Positions 14,274-24,160 of a stretch of 64,000 nt of DNA are shown piece by piece. The stretch is from Vitrella brassicaformis CCMP3155 (taxonomy: Eukaryota > Protista > Chromerida), in NCBI GenBank assembly GCA_001179505.1, contig CDMY01000255.1, positions 1 to 64,000 of the forward strand, written 5' to 3'. Below the pieces are notes generated by a model, which was not told the DNA's origin, made no database searches, and saw only the letters and a list, made by a program, of their open reading frames with translations. The position numbers and the translations under genes were made by a program. How positions within the stretch are numbered: position 1 is the stretch's first letter; every line of letters begins with the position of its first letter.

Positions 14274-15298
14274 TTAGATAGTTCGTTCACTGACCTCAGT
14301 GTGTGGTCTCTGGCACATCTCTCTCTTGTGTCTCAGCTCAGCCACCTTTGCTTTGGTCTCTGCAGTCTTGGCGGCAATGGACTCCACAGACTCACCAACC
14401 TGCATCCACCCATCCACCCATCGCACACAAACATCCGAGTGTGTGTCGGTATGTGTCGCGTGTCTTGCCTTCTTGGGACATGGTGCAGGCATGGCTGCTG
14501 TCGTGGCAGCTCCCTCCTCGGCCGCCTTGGCAAGCTGAGTGGACACAAGAGACAGGGAGAGACATGTGGATGAGTGCCATGTCTCAGTGTGTTGTCGTCT
14601 GTGTGTGTGTCGTGTTGGCTGACTGCTTCCTCCTCGGCTTTGACGTCCTCTGTCATCGACTTCTTGTCGGCGATGGCGGCTCTGACCTGCTGCACGTCCC
14701 TTGCGGCTGCCGACTGTAGCGAGGCCTCCGTGCCAGACAACTTCGCCGCCATCTCGGATGTCTGCACACAATCGTGACAGAGAGTGATGAGTGTGGTGTG
14801 TGTCTCCGTCCGTCCGTCTGTCCGTCCGTCCGTGTGTGTCACAGTACCTGTGCGTCGAGTTTGGCTGTGTCGCTTGGCGGTGCCTTTGCGGCTCTTACGG
14901 CCTGGCCCGCCTGCTCCTTGGCCGTGTCGAGAGCATGCTGACATCCACACAGAGTCATTCAGTCGTCACACTCATTCAGTGTGTGTGTGTGCGTGTGTGT
15001 GTGTGTGTGTGTGTCATGCATCTACCTTCTGTCGCTCGAGTCTCCTCCCACGGATCTCCTCTACGCTTTTGAGTGTATCGGCCTTCCTCTCTGCCTTGAC
15101 CACCTCTTTCTCGCTCTCGGTCTTGCCCGCCTGGCTGCGGCCCTCTGCGACTCCCTCGCGATAGACGTCGACTGCGTCACGCACGACGCTCGGAGGCGCA
15201 CGGCGGCTGTACATGTGGCGGATGGCGTGACGGTTGCTCAGCGAGTCCACACTGACGGCGAAGAGGAGAGACACCAGCAGGACAGCCTTGAGCATCAT
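14274..15298 (-). CDS. Secreted or surface Ala/Lys/Glu-rich coiled-coil protein, multi-exon
   Basis: Signal-peptide-like MMLKAVLLVSLLFAVSVDS at 15298; further exons TSEMAAKLSGTEASLQSAAARDVQQVRAAIADKK, VGESVESIAAKTAETKAKVAELR; ends VSERTI-TAA. Confidence 0.65.
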
Positions 15299-15961
15299 CT
15301 TGCAGTGAACGAATTGCAGAGAGTGAGTCAACAGACAATCAAACGGACGAGTGACGAATCGAAGAGCGAATCAATCGCGATGTGATGCTCGATCGTTCAT
15401 CAGTACGAGTACGAGTACGGTGAGTTTATACGTGTTGAAGAAGACCCATGTACGCACCAATCAATCAGGAGAGTCTGTCACGCAGGTATGCAAGGAGGGG
15501 ATGACATGAAAAGCTCATGAGAGTGACCAGCTACTTCCGTCTGCCCGTTGTGCATGTGCTGGGTGGGTGTTCGTGTGCCCCGTTTTGTCCTCTCAACCGA
15601 AGCTCAATCACACCCTCGTCAAGAAGGCGGTGTGATTGAAGCTCAAGCAAGAGAACACAACGGAACACGCGGACCACACCCCCCCACACTGATAACCAAA
15701 ACGCACTCCACCAGCGATTAAAACTCATTCATGTAAGCCAGTATTTACATAAGCCAGTATTTACACGAGTCAGCTCACGGAGGTGTGCCCGCACAGCCGT
15801 TGAAAAGTCAGCCAAAAGAAAATGCAGCCCACAGCTCACTCTCACACACACGGGATGCTAGCTGGAAGGAGAGATGGGAGCGAGGCAGACAGACAGGTAG
15901 ATAAAAGCAAAGAGGTGTGTGTACGCGAGCTGTGTGTGGTGGTGGCTGCTCGGCTGGTGGC

Positions 15962-17508
15962 TCAGATGAGGTCGGCCACGTTCATAGGCATCTCGTCTAT
16001 CTGCGTCGAGTAATACTGCTCGATATCACGGAGAATGCGAATGTCGTCATTCTGACCACCACACAAAGCACACACACACACACACACACACATTCGTCAT
16101 GCTGTAAGCATTCTCTCACTCTCTCTCTCTCTTTTTTTTTGTGTGTGTGTGTGTGAATGTGACTGTTACCTTGACGAAGTTGATGGCGACACCCTTCCTG
16201 CCGTATCGGCCGGACCGCCCGATGCGATGGATGTACAGCTCACGATTGTTGGGCAGGTCGTAGTTGATCACCAGCGACACCTGCACACACCCATACGCCC
16301 ATGCGATGAGCAGCGAGGTGGATGACATTCGTGTTGCCGACTGACCTGCTGCACGTCCAGCCCTCTCCCCCAGACGTCCGTAGCTATCAGTACCCTGCAC
16401 TCACACACATGCCGAAGACACAGAGTGGCATTGTGGTCTGCCTGCGTGTGTTGATGGATGATTTATGTACCTGTTAGACCCACTCCTGAACTGGCTCATA
16501 ATTTGCTCCCGCTCCTTCTGCGGCATGTCACCGTGCATCGAACTCACCTGCATCCAGCACACAACAACAGATACAGGCCGATCCTTGTGCTCCCCACCAC
16601 GCACCACGCCTCTCTCCCTCTCTCCCTCCCTCCCTTCGGTAACGAACCGTGAAGTTGGCCTCGCGCATCTTCTGTGCGAGCCAGTCGACCTTGGCCTTGG
16701 TGTTGCAGAAGATGACGGCCTGTGTGATGGTGAGTGTGTCATACAGGTCGGTGAGGGTGTCGAACTTCCACTCCTCGCGCTCGACGGCGACGAAGAACTG
16801 CTTGATGCCCTCGAGGGTGAGCTCATCACGCTTGACCAGCACGCGGAAGGGGTTGTTCATGAACTTGCGGGTCATCTCGAGCACCTCGTGCGGCATGGTG
16901 GCCGACACGAGGATCACCTGAGTGGATGGCGGCAGGTACCGGTAGATGTCGTACACCTGCTCCTTGAACCCGCGGTTGAGCATCTCGTCCGCCTCATCCA
17001 GAATCAGCATCTTGATCCGACGCGTCGTGAAGTGCCGCTCGTTGATCATGTGGAACACGCGGCCAGGTGTGCCCGACACGATGTGCACACCCGCCTCGAG
17101 GGCACGGATGTCGTTGCCGACCGCCTTGCCGCCGACGCAGCAGTGCACCTGGACGTTCATGTAGTCGCCGAGTGCGAGGGCCACCTTCTGGCTCTGCTCC
17201 GCCAACTCGCGCGTGGGTGAGAGGATGAGCACCTGGGGATCCCGCTCGGTCATGGCGATGGTCTGCAGCGCTCCCAGGCAGAAGACGCACGTCTTGCCCG
17301 TCCCCGACTGGCTCTGGACTATGACGTCACGTCCCTTCATGATGGGCACGATGGCGCGCGCCTGCACCGCCGACGGACGCTCGAAGCCGTAGGCGTAGAC
17401 GCCGCGCAGCAGGTCCTCCTTGAGCTCCATGCTGTCGAAGGTGGGGAACACCTGACAGTCCTCGCTCGTCTCAAACACCATCTGCTCATCCGAATCTAGC
17501 GCCGACAT
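15962..17508 (-). CDS. EIF4A3: DEAD-box RNA helicase eIF4AIII (exon junction complex core)
   Basis: Q motif (GFERPSAVQ), [50 protein letters not shown]; ends [19 protein letters not shown]; eIF4A3-specific QSQSGTGKT and [10 protein letters not shown] signatures. Confidence 0.95.
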
Positions 17509-17582
17509 GGTGACTACAGGGACCAACGATGGGCGGGAAGGTAGAGGGGGATAATCAGCGAAAAACACCACCCGGCAGAGCG

Positions 17583-17600
17583 TAGGGTTTGGGGTTAGGG
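17583..17600. promoter_or_regulatory. Telo-box / telomere-like motif in the divergent promoter of eIF4A3 and the smORF array
   Basis: TAGGGTTT (reverse complement AAACCCTA) at 17583-17590 followed by GGGGTTAGGG; about 75 bp upstream of the eIF4A3 ATG. Confidence 0.4.
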
Positions 17601-17633
17601 TCAGGATCGCCAGCTAAGCTCGCAACTGAAAAA

Positions 17634-17780
17634 ATGCTCGACGCTTTGCTCGTGTCCTGGATCAACGTTGGTGTCGTCGTCTACACCGTCTTCGGCATCA
17701 TCGGTTTCATTCAAGATTTCTGCTATCGTGTCCTGCACCGCATTGCTACCGGAGAGTGGGAGTGGGGCCGCTCTCGTTGA
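17634..17780 (+). CDS. smORF A1, 48 aa single-TM peptide
   Basis: MLDALLVSWINVGVVVYTVFGIIGFIQDFCYRVLHRIATGEWEWGRSR; at least 11 synonymous codon differences versus paralogue A2. Confidence 0.75.
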   Translation: MLDALLVSWINVGVVVYTVFGIIGFIQDFCYRVLHRIATGEWEWGRSR

Positions 17781-17884
17781 GCACACAACAGCAGGTACGC
17801 TATGCGTGAGGCCACAAGAGCATCAGTGACCCATTCCGCCTTCGCCCCACGTCAGACTTTGCATCCGACTGAGTGTGAGCGGCA

Positions 17885-18028
17885 ATGTTCTTCTCGCCTT
17901 TCGAGCTCTTCATTGGCTTTGTGATGGTCTTCGATATCACCCTTGGGGTCGGGCTGTTCGCCCACTACTTCCGACTGTTCGCCGGAGGGTGCGGTGGGCC
18001 GCGAAGTGTTATGAACCCCTACAGCTGA
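17885..18028 (+). CDS. smORF B1, 47 aa hydrophobic peptide
   Basis: MFFSPFELFIGFVMVFDITLGVGLFAHYFRLFAGGCGGPRSVMNPYS; CGGP...NPY conserved in B2 and the diverged B3. Confidence 0.7.
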   Translation: MFFSPFELFIGFVMVFDITLGVGLFAHYFRLFAGGCGGPRSVMNPYS

Positions 18029-18100
18029 ACCACACTGTTTCTTCCCAAATCGTGTCTCCGCTTTGCTACCAGCTGTTTGCTACCTCTTCGTCAACCGGGC

Positions 18101-18196
18101 ATGATCCCTCTCCCCCCCCTTGACCCCATCTGGTGGATCAACGCTGGCGTGGTTGTCTACTATATCATCGGCATGATCTCCTTCGTCGAAAAGTGA
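18101..18196 (+). CDS. smORF C1, 31 aa single-TM peptide
   Basis: MIPLPPLDPIWWINAGVVVYYIIGMISFVEK; shares DP(I/L)xWINxG(V/L)V with family A. Confidence 0.65.
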   Translation: MIPLPPLDPIWWINAGVVVYYIIGMISFVEK

Positions 18197-18342
18197 TCCT
18201 GGCGTTCGATCCCCTTTCGTGGATCAACGTTGGTCTCGTGGCCTACCTTCTACTCGGTCTCGTTGCTTTTGTCCAAGATTTCTGCTATCGCGTTGCTCGT
18301 CGGGTTCGAAGAGGCGAATGGCATTGGGGGCGAACTCCCTGA
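18193..18342 (+). CDS. smORF A2, 49 aa; GTG start overlapping the C1 stop (AAGTGA)
   Basis: VILAFDPLSWINVGLVAYLLLGLVAFVQDFCYRVARRVRRGEWHWGRTP; protein-level conservation with A1. Confidence 0.7.
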   Translation: MILAFDPLSWINVGLVAYLLLGLVAFVQDFCYRVARRVRRGEWHWGRTP

Positions 18343-18458
18343 CATGACGCTGAGCACACAACAGCAGGTATGCCTATGCGTGAGGCCACAAGAGCATCAG
18401 TGACGCATTCCGTCTTTGCCCCACTTCAGACTTTGCATCCGACTGAGTGTGAGCGGCA

Positions 18459-18602
18459 ATGTTCTTCTCGCCCTTCGAGCTCATCATTGGCTTTGTGATG
18501 GTCTTCGATATCACCCTTGGGGTCGGTCTGTTCGCCATCTTCTTCCAGGAGTTCGCCAGAGGGTGCGGTGGGCCGCGACGTGCTATCAACCCCTACACTT
18601 GA
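18459..18602 (+). CDS. smORF B2, 47 aa
   Basis: MFFSPFELIIGFVMVFDITLGVGLFAIFFQEFARGCGGPRRAINPYT. Confidence 0.7.
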   Translation: MFFSPFELIIGFVMVFDITLGVGLFAIFFQEFARGCGGPRRAINPYT

Positions 18603-18660
18603 ACCACATGGTTTCTTCCCAAATCGTGTCTCCGCTCTGCTACCTTATCGCCAAACGGGC

Positions 18661-18777
18661 ATGATCCCTCTCCCCCCCTTTGACCCCATCTGGTGGATCA
18701 ACGCTGGCGTGGTCGTCTACTGTATCATCGGCATGATCTCTTTCTTGTCATACCACTGGTGCCGTGAATCTCACTGA
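18661..18777 (+). CDS. smORF C2, 38 aa
   Basis: MIPLPPFDPIWWINAGVVVYCIIGMISFLSYHWCRESH. Confidence 0.65.
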   Translation: MIPLPPFDPIWWINAGVVVYCIIGMISFLSYHWCRESH

Positions 18778-18882
18778 AAAACGGTAAGTCAGACGGGGAG
18801 TGGGGCTGTACACAGAGCACTTACGCCTGTCATTCATGTCCTGTCCCTTGCCACCACAGGTTCTGCGTCATCAGGAGCGACA

Positions 18883-19026
18883 ATGGTGTTCCCGCCGGTG
18901 GACTTCATCACTTTCTGTGTCCAGGCCCTTGTCTGCACCTTCTGGATCTCGTTGTCCATCTGGATGATCCTCAATATCCTCAATATCGGGCAGGAAGACA
19001 CCTCCCGTCTGAGGCTGGCGCTTTAG
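18883..19026 (+). CDS. smORF D, 47 aa single-TM peptide
   Basis: MVFPPVDFITFCVQALVCTFWISLSIWMILNILNIGQEDTSRLRLAL; same size and N-terminal P-x-D pattern as its neighbours; preceded by intron 18784-18859. Confidence 0.55.
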   Translation: MVFPPVDFITFCVQALVCTFWISLSIWMILNILNIGQEDTSRLRLAL

Positions 19027-19095
19027 GAGCCAGTCGCTCAGCCCAACGGCCCCGTTTGCTCTGCTCCTTCTTCCCTTCCCCCATCAAGAGCTCCA

Positions 19096-19242
19096 ATGTT
19101 CTTCCCTTTCGCTGACCTCTATTTCGGATTGGTGCTCGCCTTGAACATCATCCTGTGGGTCGGGTTCGGTGCCTATTACGGCACCATGCTCCACTCATAC
19201 TGTGGTGGCCCGCAAGACATCTCCCTCAACCCCTATGCTTGA
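19096..19242 (+). CDS. smORF B3, 48 aa, diverged B paralogue
   Basis: MFFPFADLYFGLVLALNIILWVGFGAYYGTMLHSYCGGPQDISLNPYA; CGGP and NPY retained through synonymous third-position changes (tgt ggt ggc ccg vs tgc ggt ggg ccg; tat vs tac). Confidence 0.7.
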   Translation: MFFPFADLYFGLVLALNIILWVGFGAYYGTMLHSYCGGPQDISLNPYA

Positions 19243-19313
19243 GCCTGTCCTTCTCAAGCCGTGTCTCTAGTCTGCTACCTTCTCGCCAAGCCGGACTGGT
19301 TCCCCCCCCCCCG

Positions 19314-19613
19314 NNNNNNNNNNNNNNNNNNNNNNNNNNNNNNNNNNNNNNNNNNNNNNNNNNNNNNNNNNNNNNNNNNNNNNNNNNNNNNNNNNNNNNN
19401 NNNNNNNNNNNNNNNNNNNNNNNNNNNNNNNNNNNNNNNNNNNNNNNNNNNNNNNNNNNNNNNNNNNNNNNNNNNNNNNNNNNNNNNNNNNNNNNNNNNN
19501 NNNNNNNNNNNNNNNNNNNNNNNNNNNNNNNNNNNNNNNNNNNNNNNNNNNNNNNNNNNNNNNNNNNNNNNNNNNNNNNNNNNNNNNNNNNNNNNNNNNN
19601 NNNNNNNNNNNNN
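19314..19613. other. Assembly gap (300 N) inside the smORF repeat array
   Basis: Run of N flanked by poly-C tracts that match the start of family C ORFs. Confidence 0.98.
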
Positions 19614-19699
19614 CCCCCCCGACCCCATCTGGTCATCTGGTTGATCAACGCTGGCGTGGTTGTCTACTGTATCATCAGCATCATCTCCTTCGTCGAAAA

Positions 19700-19849
19700 G
19701 TGATCCTGGCGTTCGATCCCCTTTCGTGGATCAACGTTGGTCTCGTGGCCTACCTTGTACTCGGTCTCGTTGCTTTTGTCCAAGATTTCTGCTATCGCGT
19801 TGCTCGTCGGGTTCGAAGAGGCGAATGGCATTGGGGGCGAACTCCCTGA
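19700..19849 (+). CDS. smORF A3, 49 aa; GTG start overlapping the stop of a partial C3 (ends 19703)
   Basis: Near-identical to A2, with the same TTCGTCGAAAAGTGATCCTGGCG junction. Confidence 0.65.
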   Translation: MILAFDPLSWINVGLVAYLVLGLVAFVQDFCYRVARRVRRGEWHWGRTP

Positions 19850-19971
19850 CGTGACGCTGAGCACACAACAGCAGGTATGCCTATGCGTGAGGCCACAAGA
19901 GCATCAGTGACGCATTCCATCTTTGCCCCACTTCAGACTTTGCATCCGACTGAGTGTGAGGTGCAAGTTGA

Positions 19972-20091
19972 ATGTTCTTCTCGCCCTTCGAGCTCATCAT
20001 TGGATTACTGGCGGCGGCCAACGTCTGCCTGTCTATGTGTGGTTGCACCAAGATGCGGTCATTGAGACACGCTGAAGCAGAAGTTGATTAA
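19972..20091 (+). CDS. smORF B4, 39 aa, B-type N-terminus with a different C-terminus
   Basis: MFFSPFELIIGLLAAANVCLSMCGCTKMRSLRHAEAEVD. Confidence 0.5.
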   Translation: MFFSPFELIIGLLAAANVCLSMCGCTKMRSLRHAEAEVD

Positions 20092-20156
20092 GCAGCTGCC
20101 TGGCGTCTCCTGTCGTCCCTTCGGCTCTGGCCCCCCTGACCCCAACCAAAGCCGAG

Positions 20157-20330
20157 ATGATTCTTTTTGCCCCTTGATCCCATCTGGCTGATCAACACTG
20201 GAGTCGTTCTGTTTCTCGTCTCCGCCTTCCTACCCCTCGGAACTTCAGCTGCTTGTCTGCGCCCCGATCAACGCTGATGTCGTGGTCTTTCTCCTCGTCG
20301 GCATGATTCGGTTTTGATACCTTGTTGAGC
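20157..20330 (+). pseudogene. Degenerate C/A-type smORF remnants
   Basis: ATG at 20157, a frameshift in the T-run, then LDPIWLINTGVVLFLVS; a second remnant INADVVVFLLVGMIRF follows. Confidence 0.5.
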
Positions 20331-22619
20331 TTATCTGCCATAACATCGAGGGCGGGGGGTTGGTGCTCGCATCTAGCCGTCCGTGGGCTCCAGGCTGATC
20401 AGCCTGACTCTCATGGTCATGCCGCCGCCCGTCTCATAGCAGTCGGCTCCGCATCCTTCGTGTTGACCCCCATGCTCAACCCAGAGTTCCGGGGAATGAA
20501 ATCGCCTTCACTAAGACATCTCTCGGCAATCGGGCCTTTAGTGAATTCTCTCTGCTCGGTGGAGAAACGACGCCTCTCTCGGCGGAGACTCTCGACAATT
20601 TGCCCGTCTCGCCAACGCCAGCATTGCTGACGGCCACCTGTTCGCTCGAGGCACACCGCAGCAGGAGAGCTGTCTCGGCAAGCCAGCGGGCTGCAGGAGG
20701 CCAGAATTTAGAAGGCCCACACACAGCTGACCATAGAAGCTCAGAGGCACAGCCGGCCAACGATCAAGACGAGCACAGATGCCACTGTCAGTGTGTCTCC
20801 TGGTGATGGCACTTAGGCTGAGGCCAATGGCCAAGACGACTGGGCAGACGTCAACACTGCGCACAATTACCCGGGAGAAACATCACATCGACACCCGTTC
20901 TGAGAGGCTGGCAGAATGCAGGAGCCTGCTCCGACCTGAAGGTCTTCTTTCCTGTCTCGGTGAATGCAGTTCCTCGGTGGCTGATGCCGGCCTCTGATGC
21001 CCCTGACCACTTTTGGGCCTCAGCCGGCCAGTAACTAAGCTGCCCTGCGTTCCGGGCAGCACACTTCAGCGCGAGGGAACTTGTAGGGGAAGTCATGTCT
21101 CGGTGGGTTGCAGGTGAACGAGACACAGTGATCGACAAGCACTCCAGCAGCTGAGTGGGGCACAGCTGCACGCTGCGGCGGCCGGGGCGTACAAGCGGCG
21201 CAGAGGCAGTCGATGAATGGAAAGGGGGCCGGGCAGGGGGGTGGGGGCGGATGGATAGGGAAAGGAAGGGAAAGGCGGATGGATAGGAGGTATTTGTCTC
21301 TTCGCTATATATAGCTGTCCAGCGGGCGGCCGGTGGCTTGATGTGTCTTCACCACACAGCCGCCATGGCGTCTTTGACGTGGGGCCGCCATGTGACAGGC
21401 AGGTATGACGGTAGGGCTTTAGACCGTCACTCAAAGACCTACCGTCATTTCCTTTGACAACAGCGGAGAAGAGGGAAGGGGGTCGATTCCATGTCGTTTG
21501 TGACGTAATCCAAGTATTGGCGCCGCCCTTTTTTACGTTGTCAGTGCGGCACCGCCATATCTTTTTCTGTGTTTGTCGAAGGGTTACCTGAAGCTGGCTG
21601 CGGTTCTGTATGTCGTGACCAACACTTGTTCACTCCTTCTTTTTGGTGGTCATCGGCTGGTTTCTCCTTTTCTTGTCGGCTGAGGTGGGCGGGAGAGGTT
21701 GTGTGGACCTTCTCATGGATGTAGGATGTGCCTGCCTTGCTCCTTAAGCCTTGTCTACGAACTCTTTTTAGGCGCATTGATCTTAGAGAAGAGGGTACAA
21801 AGACGTGCACAATTTGCTCTCTGTGCCGGCTGACAGATGGATACGCGCGTGAATGTACAGTATCGGCATGCGCTCTTTTTCTCTTTTCTCGGTGGCAGCT
21901 GGTTCTCTACGATGCAGTTGTTCTTTTCGCCTTGTCACTTTTGACTCACACATCAATTCAGGGATATGTGTGTGTGATTTAAGCGATGTGTCTGTGGCGT
22001 TAAAGCAGTCGTGTGTGACCGGCAGAACTCGGTTGAGACATGGAATGAAAAAGACGACATGACGTTTTAAGGCACTCAAAGGGGCTTCGCATTCGTCTCT
22101 CATTAGTGCTGAATGTCTGGGTCTCTCATCCCTGCAATCCGTCGCCACCAGCGTGGACATGTACACAAATGCATATGGGTCACATCAAGGCGACCGACGC
22201 CCCAAGGCCCAAAACCGCATACGTCCTCTCTACGTCCTAATGCAATGAAGGCTATGCTACACTCGCGCACACACCCTGAACATCTATCTCTCTATCGATG
22301 ATGCATGCACAGCATCAAGACACGTCGACGAACACCATCCGCAAAGAACGGCCGTACATGTGGACAACTCGCACGTACTAGGAAGTCACATACATCAGGA
22401 ACACACACGTGTATGCATTCATGCAATCTCTCGACAAAAACGGCCATAAGACATACGTGGGTGCGTGAGCGAAAGAGTGTGAGACAGCGCGCATGTATCA
22501 ATATGCCGCCATATGTATATTCCAAGACTCAGCAGGAGGTAAACAGATACACACATGTGTCAGACGTATATATACACACACAGTATGGTGCTTACTCATA
22601 TGGACGGACAAATACACAT

Positions 22620-24160
22620 GTCAAGTACGTACGTACATATACGTGAGCAGGACACACACAGTGGCCCACTTGTCTGTGTGTCACCCACCCACACATCCAC
22701 CCACTGTCCCACCCACGCAAAACACCGCAATGTCTCAGGCGCTGACGTCCATCTCGTGCCTGTTGCTCTGCTCCTACTCCTCGCAGCATGGTGACGGGTC
22801 AAGGCCGCACAACGCCTGGAACACACACAGGAATACACAATGAACATGAGTGCTAATTGTTTGCTGTTTAATTTCTCACCCTGGAATGTACGCAGAGGGT
22901 CAGCACAGCACACATGCACACATGCGCAGGCATACACAGCGAATGCATGCGCACGTGTTTGCGTTTGCGCCTTGTCTCCACTGACCCTGGGGAGCCCATG
23001 ATCCCGCACACCCATACCACTAACATGAACCCTGTATACATTACATGAATGACACGACATGAAAGCATCGCCTCCACCCGATGAGCTGTATGCGTACCCA
23101 TGGCGAAATACACACCGCCGTAGCTGCCGAATTCCACGTTCTCATGGAACGCCGCGAATCCTGTAGCACCGACAAACCCCACGATGTGTGCGTTGGGTGA
23201 ATCGGCATCCTGCACGTACCGCCCAGAGTTGAGTAGAAGCACTGAGCAGCGTAGAACGACGGAACGGCCACATTGGCCTTTCCGGAGTTCATGGCCATAG
23301 AAAGGAACATCGCCTGACCAACCAGGTCCAGATAAACGGCCATAACAATGTGTGTGTGGTGTGTGCCAGGCAGGTGCCGACTTGAAAGAGCCCGCAAACG
23401 GGAAGTGAAAGACATGTGGCGACCGCAGGGCCCCACAGCAGGACCTCTTGCTGGACACACAGACAAACAGACAGACAGGCACTCACAAAGGACACGCATG
23501 TGATATGGGGTTGTGAGCGATACATACCTTGCCGTACAGAATGAGCTGCTTCATCAGCAGCGGTGCCTGTGAGCCGATAATGCCACCCAGGACGCCGTAC
23601 AGGAGTGCTGACACACACACAGCACGCACAGATTTGTCGCCCTACTTGTGATGGACGCTCCACCTACTGATCCAGTCTCCTGCATCGTCCTCTGGGCTGT
23701 CAGGCTGCTGCTCGACGTCGTCTTTTTCGGCATCCAGGATGGGTTCCAATTCCCGCGGCGAACTCTCCTCCCTGTTGACAGGACAATCAGTCTCTGGAGA
23801 GGTCGCGCTGATGGCTATGTCATGCACCCACCCCTGTGTGTCCTGGCCCTCATTGTGGTTCTCTCTGTCCTGGCCAAAGCAAGACCTACAGCACTGGCCA
23901 AACCACGACCTACAGCACACAACAGAGAAGGATGAATGTGTGGATCGTTTGATGCCGTGTACGCACCAGAAGGCTGCGAATCGTTCAAGCATCTGGCCAT
24001 CGATGTACCAGAGGGACACTATGCACACCCCGGCGGAGGCGACCCAAAGGAGCATGTACATCAGGTACCACCAGCTTGGAGCGGGCAGAAAGATGCTCTC
24101 TCCCAGTTCCTGACAGAACGAAGACACGCACGACGACACGCACGGAGCAGGGGCAGTGTG

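What the first reader, a model, noticed from the sequence alone, without database searches (positions are those of the whole stretch)
17781..19940. Spliceosomal introns sit between, not inside, the smORFs, suggesting a spliced polycistronic transcript
Canonical GT..AG intron-like blocks lie in the spacers after stop codons: 17795-17855, 18368-18429 and 19875-19936 (all CAG|GTA(C/T)GC...CAG) and 18784-18859 (GTAAGT...CCACAG). Splicing does not put A in frame with B, so it does not fuse the peptides. One long mRNA with several stops upstream of exon junctions would normally be an NMD substrate; curiously, the locus shares its promoter region with eIF4A3, the EJC core helicase. The alternative is that each ORF has its own tiny transcript with a UTR intron.
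Basis: partly seen in the sequence, partly recalled or inferred. Interest (0 to 1): 0.75.

Follow-up and report, generated by a model that had tools for sequence, protein, structure and literature searches.

The report
Intron-like blocks between tiny membrane-peptide genes
In the alga Vitrella brassicaformis, a row of tiny membrane-peptide genes has four intron-like blocks in the gaps between the genes; this hints that several peptides share one spliced messenger RNA, but the blocks' ends look unlike proven Vitrella introns and no RNA data could be checked.

Summary
The four GT..AG blocks are at the stated coordinates (61, 62, 76 and 62 nt), each 6-25 nt after a stop codon and 23-35 nt before the next ATG. 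Three are copies of one duplicated unit, so there are two independent cases.

For real introns:
- Their donors score like those of 30 curated Vitrella introns.
- Their lengths fit.
- Such blocks are modestly enriched in the family's spacers (P about 0.01-0.05).
- A sister array on contig C708 has one typical intron in a spacer and one inside an A-type ORF.
- The annotated protein P0001 uses exactly the acceptor at 18859|18860.

Against:
- All four 3' tails are C-rich and G-poor. This falls outside all 40 curated introns, which have G/T-rich tails.
- C/T-rich spacers are general in these arrays.
- The C316 array has no such block.
- No transcript data were reachable.

I found nothing linking the array to its eIF4A3 neighbour.

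The assembly gap sits in a poly-C run and touches no block.

The scan had already noted this array (s1-233254) and a sister array on other DNA (s1-226998).

Verdict: a spliced multi-ORF transcript is plausible at about 40%, but unproven.

The parts
16052..17510 (-). eIF4A3 gene, read divergently from the array. First coding exon is about 16645-17510. Four short introns lie at about 16548-16647, 16395-16470, 16281-16345 and 16052-16169.
   Evidence: Exon 1 scores 465 bits to human eIF4A-III against 369 bits to eIF4A-I.
17511..17633 (.). 123-nt stretch between the eIF4A3 ATG and the A1 ATG, presumably a two-way promoter. It contains a telomere-repeat-like G/T-rich motif.
   Evidence: The promoter role is inferred.
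17634..17780 (+). smORF A1 (48 aa, A/C type, one predicted membrane helix).
17795..17855 (+). Intron-like block I1 (61 nt). Donor score 11.1, acceptor score -11.4.
17885..18028 (+). smORF B1 (47 aa, B/D type).
18101..18196 (+). smORF C1 (31 aa, short A/C type). Its stop overlaps the GTG at the start of A2 (GTGA).
18193..18342 (+). smORF A2 (49 aa). It has no ATG; a GTG sits where the paralogs have their ATG.
18368..18429 (+). Intron-like block I2 (62 nt). Donor score 6.7, acceptor score -4.5. It is a copy of I1, differing by 5 substitutions and 1 indel.
18459..18602 (+). smORF B2 (47 aa).
18568..18859 (+). The 292-nt intron of the annotated Vitrella protein P0001, which reads join(18498..18567, 18860..19026). 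It has a weak donor inside B2 (score 3.2) and the same acceptor as I3. The whole of C2 lies inside it.
   Evidence: The exon mapping is my own reading of the sequence.
18661..18777 (+). smORF C2 (38 aa).
18784..18859 (+). Intron-like block I3 (76 nt, GTAAGT...CACAG). Donor score 10.0, acceptor score -5.7.
18883..19026 (+). smORF D (47 aa, B/D type).
19096..19242 (+). smORF B3 (48 aa).
19314..19613 (.). Assembly gap inside the poly-C run at the start of a C-type ORF. The flanks align to adjacent positions of intact B-to-C junctions. True length and reading frame are unknown.
19614..19703 (+). C3, the C-terminal part of a C-type ORF. Its start is lost in the gap, and the expected ATG to the left of the gap reads CTG.
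19700..19849 (+). smORF A3 (GTG start), 98% identical to the A2 unit.
19875..19936 (+). Intron-like block I4 (62 nt), a young copy of I2.
19972..20091 (+). smORF B4 (39 aa). It diverges from B1 and B2 after about codon 11, so the 3' end of the array is decaying.

Best explanation
The array from 17634 to about 20300 is a real cluster of two alternating families of roughly 30-50-codon single-helix membrane peptides: the A/C type and the B/D type.

Most likely it is transcribed rightwards from the short region it shares with eIF4A3, as one RNA or a few RNAs that each carry several ORFs. The GT..AG blocks after A1, A2, A3 and C2 would then be removed as short introns.

Splicing shortens those spacers to 43, 54, 66 and 29 nt (after A1, A2, A3 and C2) and removes out-of-frame ATGs that would otherwise divert ribosomes from the next ORF. 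Each ORF would then be translated from its own start codon by termination and re-initiation, which works best after very short ORFs.

What is shown: the anatomy, that the ORFs are coding, donor quality, the modest enrichment, and the typical introns in the sister array. What is inferred: transcription as a unit, actual splicing, and re-initiation.
For: - Coordinates and signals are confirmed.
- Donor scores are 6.7-11.1, against a median of 8.4 and a 75th percentile of 9.6 for 30 curated introns.
- Block lengths of 61-76 nt fall inside the real range of 59-133 nt.
- Donor-plus-YAG blocks are enriched in the family's spacers: 5 of 14 spacers against 0.73 expected (P about 3e-4). On the conservative set it is 4 of 12 against 0.94 (P = 0.008), and the sum statistic gives P = 0.023.
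- The same layout, a donor 6-18 nt after an A-type stop, recurs in the divergent arrays on C781 and C708.
- The C708 array has a spacer block with typical signals (L012:2430-2489, total score 20.0). Such scores occur at about 0.011 per kb in shuffles.
- The C708 array also has a typical intron inside an A-type ORF (L012:1437-1506). Removing it restores a match, residue for residue, with the C781 paralog.
- ATGs are depleted in the would-be exonic spacers (3 observed, 7.1 expected) but not in the blocks (7 observed, 4.55 expected). The split has P = 0.048.
- The 43 exonic spacer bases flanking I1 and I2 show 0 substitutions between units 1 and 2. The block shows 5 in 61, the B ORF 16 in 144 and the B-to-C spacer 7 in 58.
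- The annotated protein P0001 uses the acceptor 18859|18860. That annotation came from Augustus with RNA-seq intron hints (PMC4501334).
- Multi-ORF nuclear transcripts are established in green algae, where loci with three or more UTR introns were among those flagged as candidates (PMC7896298).
Against: - The 3' tails of all four blocks, and of the C781 and C708 A-to-B blocks, are C-rich and G-poor. They fall outside all 40 homology-located Vitrella introns, which end in G/T-rich tracts such as TGTGTGCAG|G.
- C/T-rich tracts followed by AG are common in these spacers whether or not a donor is present, so only the donor is a specific signal.
- Three of the four blocks are one duplicated unit.
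- The C316 array has four spacers of 41-125 nt with no such block.
- Only two independent cases exist in the window. With the weaker copy counted, chance is not firmly excluded: such donor-plus-YAG blocks occur at about 1.25 per kb in the window.
- No transcript evidence of any kind was reachable. The exact smORF sequences are absent from the 15-billion-protein set, and no encoding contig was returned for P0001.
- P0001 pairs the I3 acceptor with a different donor, one inside B2.
Confidence: 0.4

Rival explanations
1. The array is one multi-ORF transcript, but the blocks are not spliced. They would be ordinary C/T-rich spacer sequence that happens to carry a donor-like GTAYGY, or that motif serves some other purpose.
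For: - The acceptor tails lie outside all 40 verified introns.
- C/T-rich tracts occur in spacers that have no donor.
- The central 30 nt of the I1 and I2 blocks is fully conserved, which a neutral intron interior would not require.
- The C316 array works without any such block.
- No typical intron is predicted inside the array on either strand.
Against: - Donor-plus-YAG blocks are enriched over shuffles.
- If kept, the blocks contain ATGs that open 40-42-codon out-of-frame ORFs overlapping the B and D start codons.
- The C708 sister array has a typical spacer intron.
Confidence: 0.25
2. There are separate small transcription units, each with one or two ORFs. Each B or D ORF has its own start site inside or just after the upstream ORF, and the block is its 5'-UTR intron.
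For: - Vitrella genes are tightly packed, with a median of 92 bp between genes (PMC4501334).
- A-then-B pairing recurs at all four loci.
- Another scan report proposed pairwise reading for a sister array (s1-226998).
Against: - The donors lie only 6-25 nt past the upstream stop, so the first exon would have to start inside the upstream ORF.
- Spacers without blocks are only 58-75 nt from stop to ATG.
- C1-to-A2 and C3-to-A3 overlap as GTGA, leaving no room for a promoter.
Confidence: 0.12
3. The acceptors serve splicing that fuses ORFs, as in the annotated model. A weak donor just after the helix of a B-type ORF joins to the spacer acceptor, which makes a two-helix protein (the N-terminal part of B2 plus D) and skips C2.
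For: - P0001 reads join(18498..18567, 18860..19026).
- An analogous weak donor about 36 codons into the C708 B' ORF could pair with the typical acceptor at L012:2489.
Against: - The donor score is 3.2, below the 5th percentile of real donors.
- The 292-nt intron is far longer than the usual 59-133 nt.
- The model starts at an internal Met of B2.
- For the A-to-B junctions, fusion is impossible because two in-frame TGA codons precede the B ATG.
- Stops follow the conserved C-terminal motifs in every paralog.
Confidence: 0.08
4. The array is silent or decaying duplicated DNA, and the blocks mean nothing.
For: - Several copies lack an ATG (A2, A3, C3).
- B4 and the C4-like copy are truncated or diverged.
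- The young pair B1/B2 has pN/pS of 0.91.
- Only 2 of about 25 family ORFs are annotated.
Against: - Older pairs show pN/pS of 0.36-0.65, with second codon positions changing least.
- Starts, stops and motifs are conserved across four loci that cannot be aligned as DNA.
Confidence: 0.1

Closest known systems
Polycistronic nuclear transcripts of green algae (Chlamydomonas, Chromochloris; Gallaher et al. 2021, PMC7896298)
   Same: Several small, closely spaced ORFs lie on one strand, each with its own start and stop. In that study, loci with three or more introns in a UTR were among those flagged as polycistronic candidates.
   Different: Those loci were proven with Iso-Seq, proteomics and in-vitro translation, and mostly hold 2-3 unrelated ORFs of hundreds of codons. 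Leaky scanning was the favoured mechanism. Here there are ten or more ORFs of 31-49 codons from two alternating families, internal ATGs that argue against leaky scanning, a different lineage (a chromerid alveolate), and no RNA evidence.
tarsal-less / polished-rice polycistronic smORF genes of insects (PMC1852585)
   Same: One RNA carries several tandem paralogous smORFs that are translated separately.
   Different: Those peptides are 11-32 aa, soluble and of one family. I know of no inter-ORF introns being part of that description (from memory). There is no homology to the peptides here.
Tandem gene arrays resolved by spliced-leader trans-splicing (dinoflagellates, perkinsids, kinetoplastids)
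   Same: This is an alveolate relative with a head-to-tail array and pyrimidine-rich spacers followed by AG.
   Different: The B2-to-C2 spacer has no AG at all. The papers found do not describe trans-splicing in Vitrella (titles and abstracts only).
Ordinary Vitrella GT-AG introns
   Same: They share a GT donor in a [C/A][A/C]G|GT[G/A][A/C]G context, a length of 59-133 nt and a YAG acceptor. GTACGC is itself a donor used in two HSP70 introns.
   Different: Real introns end in G/T-rich tracts, whereas the four blocks end in C-rich, G-poor tracts.

Membership tests
Vitrella U2-type GT-AG intron | The donor matches the species consensus. | tested here: met
   Donor scores are 11.1, 6.7, 10.0 and 6.7. 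The training introns have a median of 8.4 and a 5th percentile of 3.7.
Vitrella U2-type GT-AG intron | The length falls within the species range. | tested here: met
   The blocks are 61-76 nt. In 39 of 40 curated introns the length is 59-133 nt.
Vitrella U2-type GT-AG intron | A G/T-rich 3' tail precedes the YAG. | tested here: not met
   The block tails have 8-10 C and 1-3 G in 20 nt. The 40 real introns have 0-7 C and 3-11 G. Acceptor scores are -4.5 to -11.4, against +3.8 at the 5th percentile.
Vitrella U2-type GT-AG intron | The intron is removed from the RNA, shown by junction reads. | not testable with these tools
   No transcript data were reachable. The RNA-seq exists as ENA ERP006229.
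Eukaryotic polycistronic smORF transcript | Two or more conserved coding ORFs lie on one strand with short spacers. | tested here: met
   There are ten or more ORFs. Spacers are 58-122 nt, or overlap by 4 nt. Older pairs have pN/pS of 0.36-0.65.
Eukaryotic polycistronic smORF transcript | One capped, polyadenylated RNA spans the ORFs. | not testable with these tools
   The evidence is only indirect: donors lie 6-25 nt after stops, and the GTGA overlaps leave no room for a promoter.
Eukaryotic polycistronic smORF transcript | Each ORF is translated. | not testable with these tools
   No ribosome-profiling or proteome data were available.
Spliced-leader trans-spliced polycistron | A spliced-leader gene is present, and an AG acceptor lies upstream of every ORF. 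| tested here: not met
   The dinoflagellate leader pattern gives 1 hit at 3 mismatches, equal to the control. The B2-to-C2 spacer lacks any AG. A divergent leader cannot be excluded.
EJC-dependent NMD substrate (50-55 nt rule) | The stop codon lies more than 50-55 nt upstream of an exon junction. | tested here: not met
   The stops next to the junctions are 14, 25, 6 and 25 nt upstream. Stops further upstream would meet the rule unless re-initiating ribosomes clear the complexes. The rule comes from other organisms and is untested in Vitrella.

The most novel reading that the evidence does not exclude
A single spliced messenger RNA in an alveolate alga carries ten or more micropeptide ORFs that are read by serial termination and re-initiation. 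Its introns belong to an unusual class with C-rich tails and are placed within 25 nt after stop codons. At that distance the terminating ribosome would strip the exon-junction complex, which would be a built-in way to keep a many-stop mRNA safe from NMD.
Probability: 0.12. Interest if true: 0.7.

Novelty: new member of a known kind. Interest (0 to 1): 0.42.

Why it matters
If junction and long reads confirm it, this would be, as far as my two literature searches showed, the first nuclear polycistronic mRNA described in the chromerid/apicomplexan lineage, and an unusually long one. It would also offer a natural case for asking how a message with many stop codons upstream of exon junctions avoids decay.

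Two results stand regardless of the outcome:
- Vitrella introns carry a strong G/T-rich 3' signature, which is useful for gene prediction.
- Only 2 of about 25 ORFs of this peptide family appear in the published annotation, one of them as a doubtful fusion model.

Tried and rejected
- Rfam scan of 15000-23000: no match.
- Folding of five spacers as RNA: z-scores from -1.2 to +1.0, so there is no structured element.
- Pfam on eight smORFs: only sub-threshold noise.
- Exact look-up of ten smORFs among 15 billion proteins: none found.
- Encoding contig for P0001: none returned. This closed the route to cDNA contigs.
- Word searches with B2 and with the A-type profile: only Vitrella's own P0001 and P0002.
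- Full HMMER search of 1.84 billion representatives with the A-type profile: P0002 plus one unrelated repeat protein, P0003.
- Dinoflagellate spliced-leader pattern: absent.
- TGTAA as a possible poly(A) signal: it occurs twice after eIF4A3, but nowhere on either strand between 16107 and 23041, so it says nothing about transcript ends here.
- A long alternative-frame ORF created by removing the blocks: none. The only frame open up to the I1 donor stops five codons after the junction.
- A fungal origin, my first guess from composition, was dropped once the database named P0001 as Vitrella brassicaformis.
Exons were examined by reference only. In scripts, exon ends were joined solely to test frame and stop compatibility when locating introns.
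Full report
**What is there**

The window comes from the 72.7-Mb, 1064-contig assembly of the chromerid alga Vitrella brassicaformis. The database names the one annotated protein of this region as "Vitrella brassicaformis CCMP3155".

On the minus strand, 16052-17510 is a four-intron gene. Its first exon scores 465 bits to human eIF4A-III and 369 bits to eIF4A-I.

On the plus strand, 123 nt away, a head-to-tail row of short ORFs begins:
- A1 17634-17780
- B1 17885-18028
- C1 18101-18196
- A2 18193-18342
- B2 18459-18602
- C2 18661-18777
- D 18883-19026
- B3 19096-19242
- an assembly gap
- the end of C3, running to 19703
- A3 19700-19849
- B4 19972-20091
- degenerate copies after that

The ORFs fall into two families, A/C and B/D. 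Profile searches of the whole genome find them at only four loci: this one, C316, C781 and C708.

The loci cannot be detected from one another as DNA. At the protein level, however, start positions, motifs and stop positions are kept. For older pairs pN/pS is 0.36-0.65, with second codon positions changing least. The premise that these are coding smORFs therefore holds.

No Pfam family matches. A full HMMER scan of 1.84 billion representative proteins finds only Vitrella's own annotated copy, plus one unrelated repeat protein.

**The gap, tested first**

The N run at 19314-19613 is flanked on both sides by poly-C. The left flank aligns to the end of the B-to-C spacer. The right flank aligns to the codons that directly follow the poly-C run in C1 and C2.

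The two sides are therefore homologous to adjacent sequence. The break is probably a homopolymer failure, and the C316 array has a gap at the same kind of place. Its true length, which could hide extra units, and the reading frame across it cannot be known. It lies between B3 and C3 and touches none of the four blocks.

**The observation**

They begin 14, 25, 6 and 25 nt after a stop codon. They end 29, 29, 23 and 35 nt before the next ATG.

In the B frame, two TGA codons lie between the acceptor and the ATG. Removing the blocks creates no long ORF in any frame. So "between, not inside" and "does not fuse" are both correct.

I1, I2 and I4 are copies of one unit. I2 and I4 belong to a 98%-identical duplication, and I1 differs from I2 by five substitutions and one indel. 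The window therefore holds only two independent cases.

**A yardstick from real Vitrella introns**

I located introns by homology. Exon-by-exon matches of the HSP70 profile in seven paralogous genes, plus the four eIF4A3 introns, gave 30 junctions. For these the residue count across the junction fitted the profile.

Ten further junctions from Cpn60/TCP1 genes served as a test set.

Real introns are 59-133 nt long, with one of 380 nt. Their donors read [C/A][A/C]G|GT[G/A][A/C]G[C/T], and GTACGC itself occurs twice. Their last 20 nt are strikingly G/T-rich, typically TGTGTGCAG|G. C counts there are 0-7, with a median of 2 in the 30 training introns, and G counts are 3-11.

**How the blocks compare**

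| Block | Donor score | Acceptor score |
|---|---|---|
| I1 | 11.1 | -11.4 |
| I2 | 6.7 | -4.5 |
| I3 | 10.0 | -5.7 |
| I4 | 6.7 | -7.5 |

The donors sit at or above the real median of 8.4, and the lengths fit. The acceptors are far below every real intron, whose 5th percentile is +3.8. The tails have 8-10 C and 1-3 G.

Nearly all spacers in these arrays contain C/T-rich tracts, whether or not a donor is present. So the "pyrimidine tract plus CAG" half of the blocks is not specific. Only the donor is.

**Is it more than chance?**

- Donors scoring 10 or more occur at 0.17 per kb in the window, real introns included.
- Donors scoring 6.7 or more with a YAG 55-85 nt downstream occur at about 1.25 per kb.
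- Over all four arrays, 5 of 14 spacers carry a donor of 5.3 or more with a YAG 50-100 nt further on, against 0.73 expected in shuffles. That threshold was chosen after seeing the data.
- I repeated the test conservatively: 12 non-redundant spacers, the weaker copy of the duplicated block, and dinucleotide-preserving shuffles. This gives 4 against 0.94 expected (P = 0.008). A threshold-free sum statistic gives P = 0.023.

The enrichment is real but modest.

**Independent hints in favour of splicing**

(a) Divergent sister arrays show the same layout. A GTACGC or GTATAT donor lies 6-18 nt after an A-type stop, followed by a 71-76-nt block ending in CAG (L011:1633-1703 and L012:1648-1723).

(b) The C708 array contains two blocks with fully typical signals.
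- One lies inside an A-type ORF (L012:1437-1506). Removing it restores a residue-for-residue match with the C781 paralog.
- The other lies in a spacer 29 nt after a B-type stop (L012:2430-2489, total score 20.0). Scores of 20 or more occur at 0.011 per kb in locally shuffled sequence and 0.4 per kb in the real window.

So the family is spliced, and at least one good intron candidate does sit between smORFs.

(c) ATG triplets are depleted in the would-be exonic spacers (3 observed, 7.1 expected) and not in the blocks (7 observed, 4.55 expected). The split has P = 0.048. If the blocks were retained, their ATGs would open 40-42-codon out-of-frame ORFs across the B and D start codons.

(d) Between units 1 and 2, the 43 exonic spacer bases flanking the block have no substitution. 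The block has 5 in 61, the B ORF 16 in 144 and the B-to-C spacer 7 in 58. However, the central 30 nt of the block is also fully conserved.

(e) The annotated 78-aa protein P0001 reads join(18498..18567, 18860..19026). It uses exactly the I3 acceptor, though with a weak donor inside B2 (score 3.2) and an unusually long 292-nt intron. The annotation was made by Augustus with TopHat2 RNA-seq junctions as intron hints (PMC4501334). An RNA-supported junction ending at 18859 is therefore possible but not shown.

**Against splicing**

- The acceptor tails are atypical.
- The C316 array has four spacers of 41-125 nt with no such block.
- No typical intron is predicted anywhere inside the window's array on either strand.
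- No RNA data were available.

**Mechanism**

A donor only 6-25 nt past a stop cannot belong to a self-contained downstream gene, unless that gene's start site lies inside the upstream ORF. The other spacers are 58-75 nt from stop to ATG, and C-to-A is a 4-nt GTGA overlap. A multi-ORF RNA is therefore the most economical reading.

Internal ATGs within the ORFs argue against leaky scanning. ORFs of 31-49 codons are in the size range where re-initiation after termination is efficient (general knowledge, not tested here).

I put a spliced multi-ORF transcript at about 0.40. An unspliced multi-ORF transcript is at 0.25, separate small units with UTR introns at 0.12, ORF-fusing splicing like P0001 at 0.08, and silent decaying DNA at 0.10.

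Under the usual 50-55-nt rule, the stops next to the junctions would not be flagged, because they lie 6-25 nt upstream. An exon-junction complex about 24 nt upstream of the junction would sit inside or at the end of the ORF, where the ribosome would remove it.

Only the stops of ORFs further upstream pose the problem, and only if downstream ORFs are left untranslated. All of this is inference from other organisms.

The eIF4A3 neighbour is real. Genes in this genome sit a median of 92 bp apart, and nothing I found links the two functionally.

**Comparison with known systems**

The closest systems are listed below.
- The polycistronic nuclear loci of green algae. These were proven by Iso-Seq, and loci with multiple UTR introns were among those flagged as candidates (PMC7896298).
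- The insect tal/pri smORF genes (PMC1852585).

Spliced-leader processing, as in dinoflagellates, is unlikely. The leader pattern is absent, and one spacer has no AG at all.

My literature searches returned no paper whose title or abstract concerns nuclear polycistrons or trans-splicing in Vitrella.

**Earlier scan notes**

The scan had already noted this array (s1-233254), the GTGA overlap (s1-233423) and a sister array on another contig (s1-226998).

Noticed in passing
window 18193-18196 and 19700-19703: The stop of C1 (and of C3) overlaps a GTG at the start of A2 (and A3), reading GTGA. A2 and A3 have no ATG. The C708 paralog has an ATG at the homologous codon (MILGFADP against VILAFDP). 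This points to a non-AUG start, coupled termination and re-initiation, or a -1 shift on GAAAAG. The scan already noted it as s1-233423.
   Followed up: partly
HSP70, Cpn60/TCP1 and eIF4A3 loci (L013-L022, L035-L064; window 16052-16647, minus strand): All 40 homology-located Vitrella introns end in a G/T-rich tract, often (TG)n followed by CAG|G, with very few C. This looks like a species-wide 3' splice-site signature and is worth a genome-wide check.
   Followed up: partly
window 17510-17604, plus strand: A block with typical intron signals (atg|GTGACT...GGGTCAG, 95 nt, total score 19.5) lies just upstream of the A1 ATG. Its G/T-rich tail is a telomere-repeat-like motif (TAGGGTTTGGGGTTAGGGT) in the shared promoter region. 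If it were a real 5'-UTR intron, the array's first exon would overlap eIF4A3 exon 1 in antisense.
   Followed up: no
L012 (C708) 1386-2700 and L011 (C781) 1486-2747: These are sister arrays of the same two peptide families. They hold one typical intron inside an A-type ORF, one typical intron in a spacer, several copies without an ATG, and frameshifted copies. Contig C781 ends inside its array.
   Followed up: partly
L009 (C316) about 1476-1777, and window 19314-19613: The assembly gaps in both arrays sit in poly-C/poly-G runs. The arrays may therefore hold more units than were assembled.
   Followed up: partly
window 18498-19026: The annotated protein P0001 (78 aa) is a fusion of an internal-Met fragment of B2 with D across a 292-nt intron that swallows C2. 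It is probably a gene-prediction compromise. P0002 (71 aa, C316) is an A-type ORF with a 21-residue upstream extension that overlaps the preceding B ORF. These two are the only family members I found in the annotation.
   Followed up: partly
window 15745-15765, minus strand: TGTAAATACTGGCTTA occurs twice in tandem about 200 nt after the eIF4A3 stop. Another minus-strand TGTAA at 23041 lies just downstream of the minus-strand gene at 23.4-26.6 kb. TGTAA may be a poly(A) signal in this species. There is none on either strand between 16107 and 23041.
   Followed up: partly
window 19972-20330: The 3' end of the array is degenerate. B4 diverges after about codon 11, and the C4-like copies are short and broken.
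   Followed up: no
P0003 (448 aa, from the representative library): This tandem-repeat protein matched the A-type profile in seven weak stretches. It is a repeat-summed match and not a relative.
   Followed up: no
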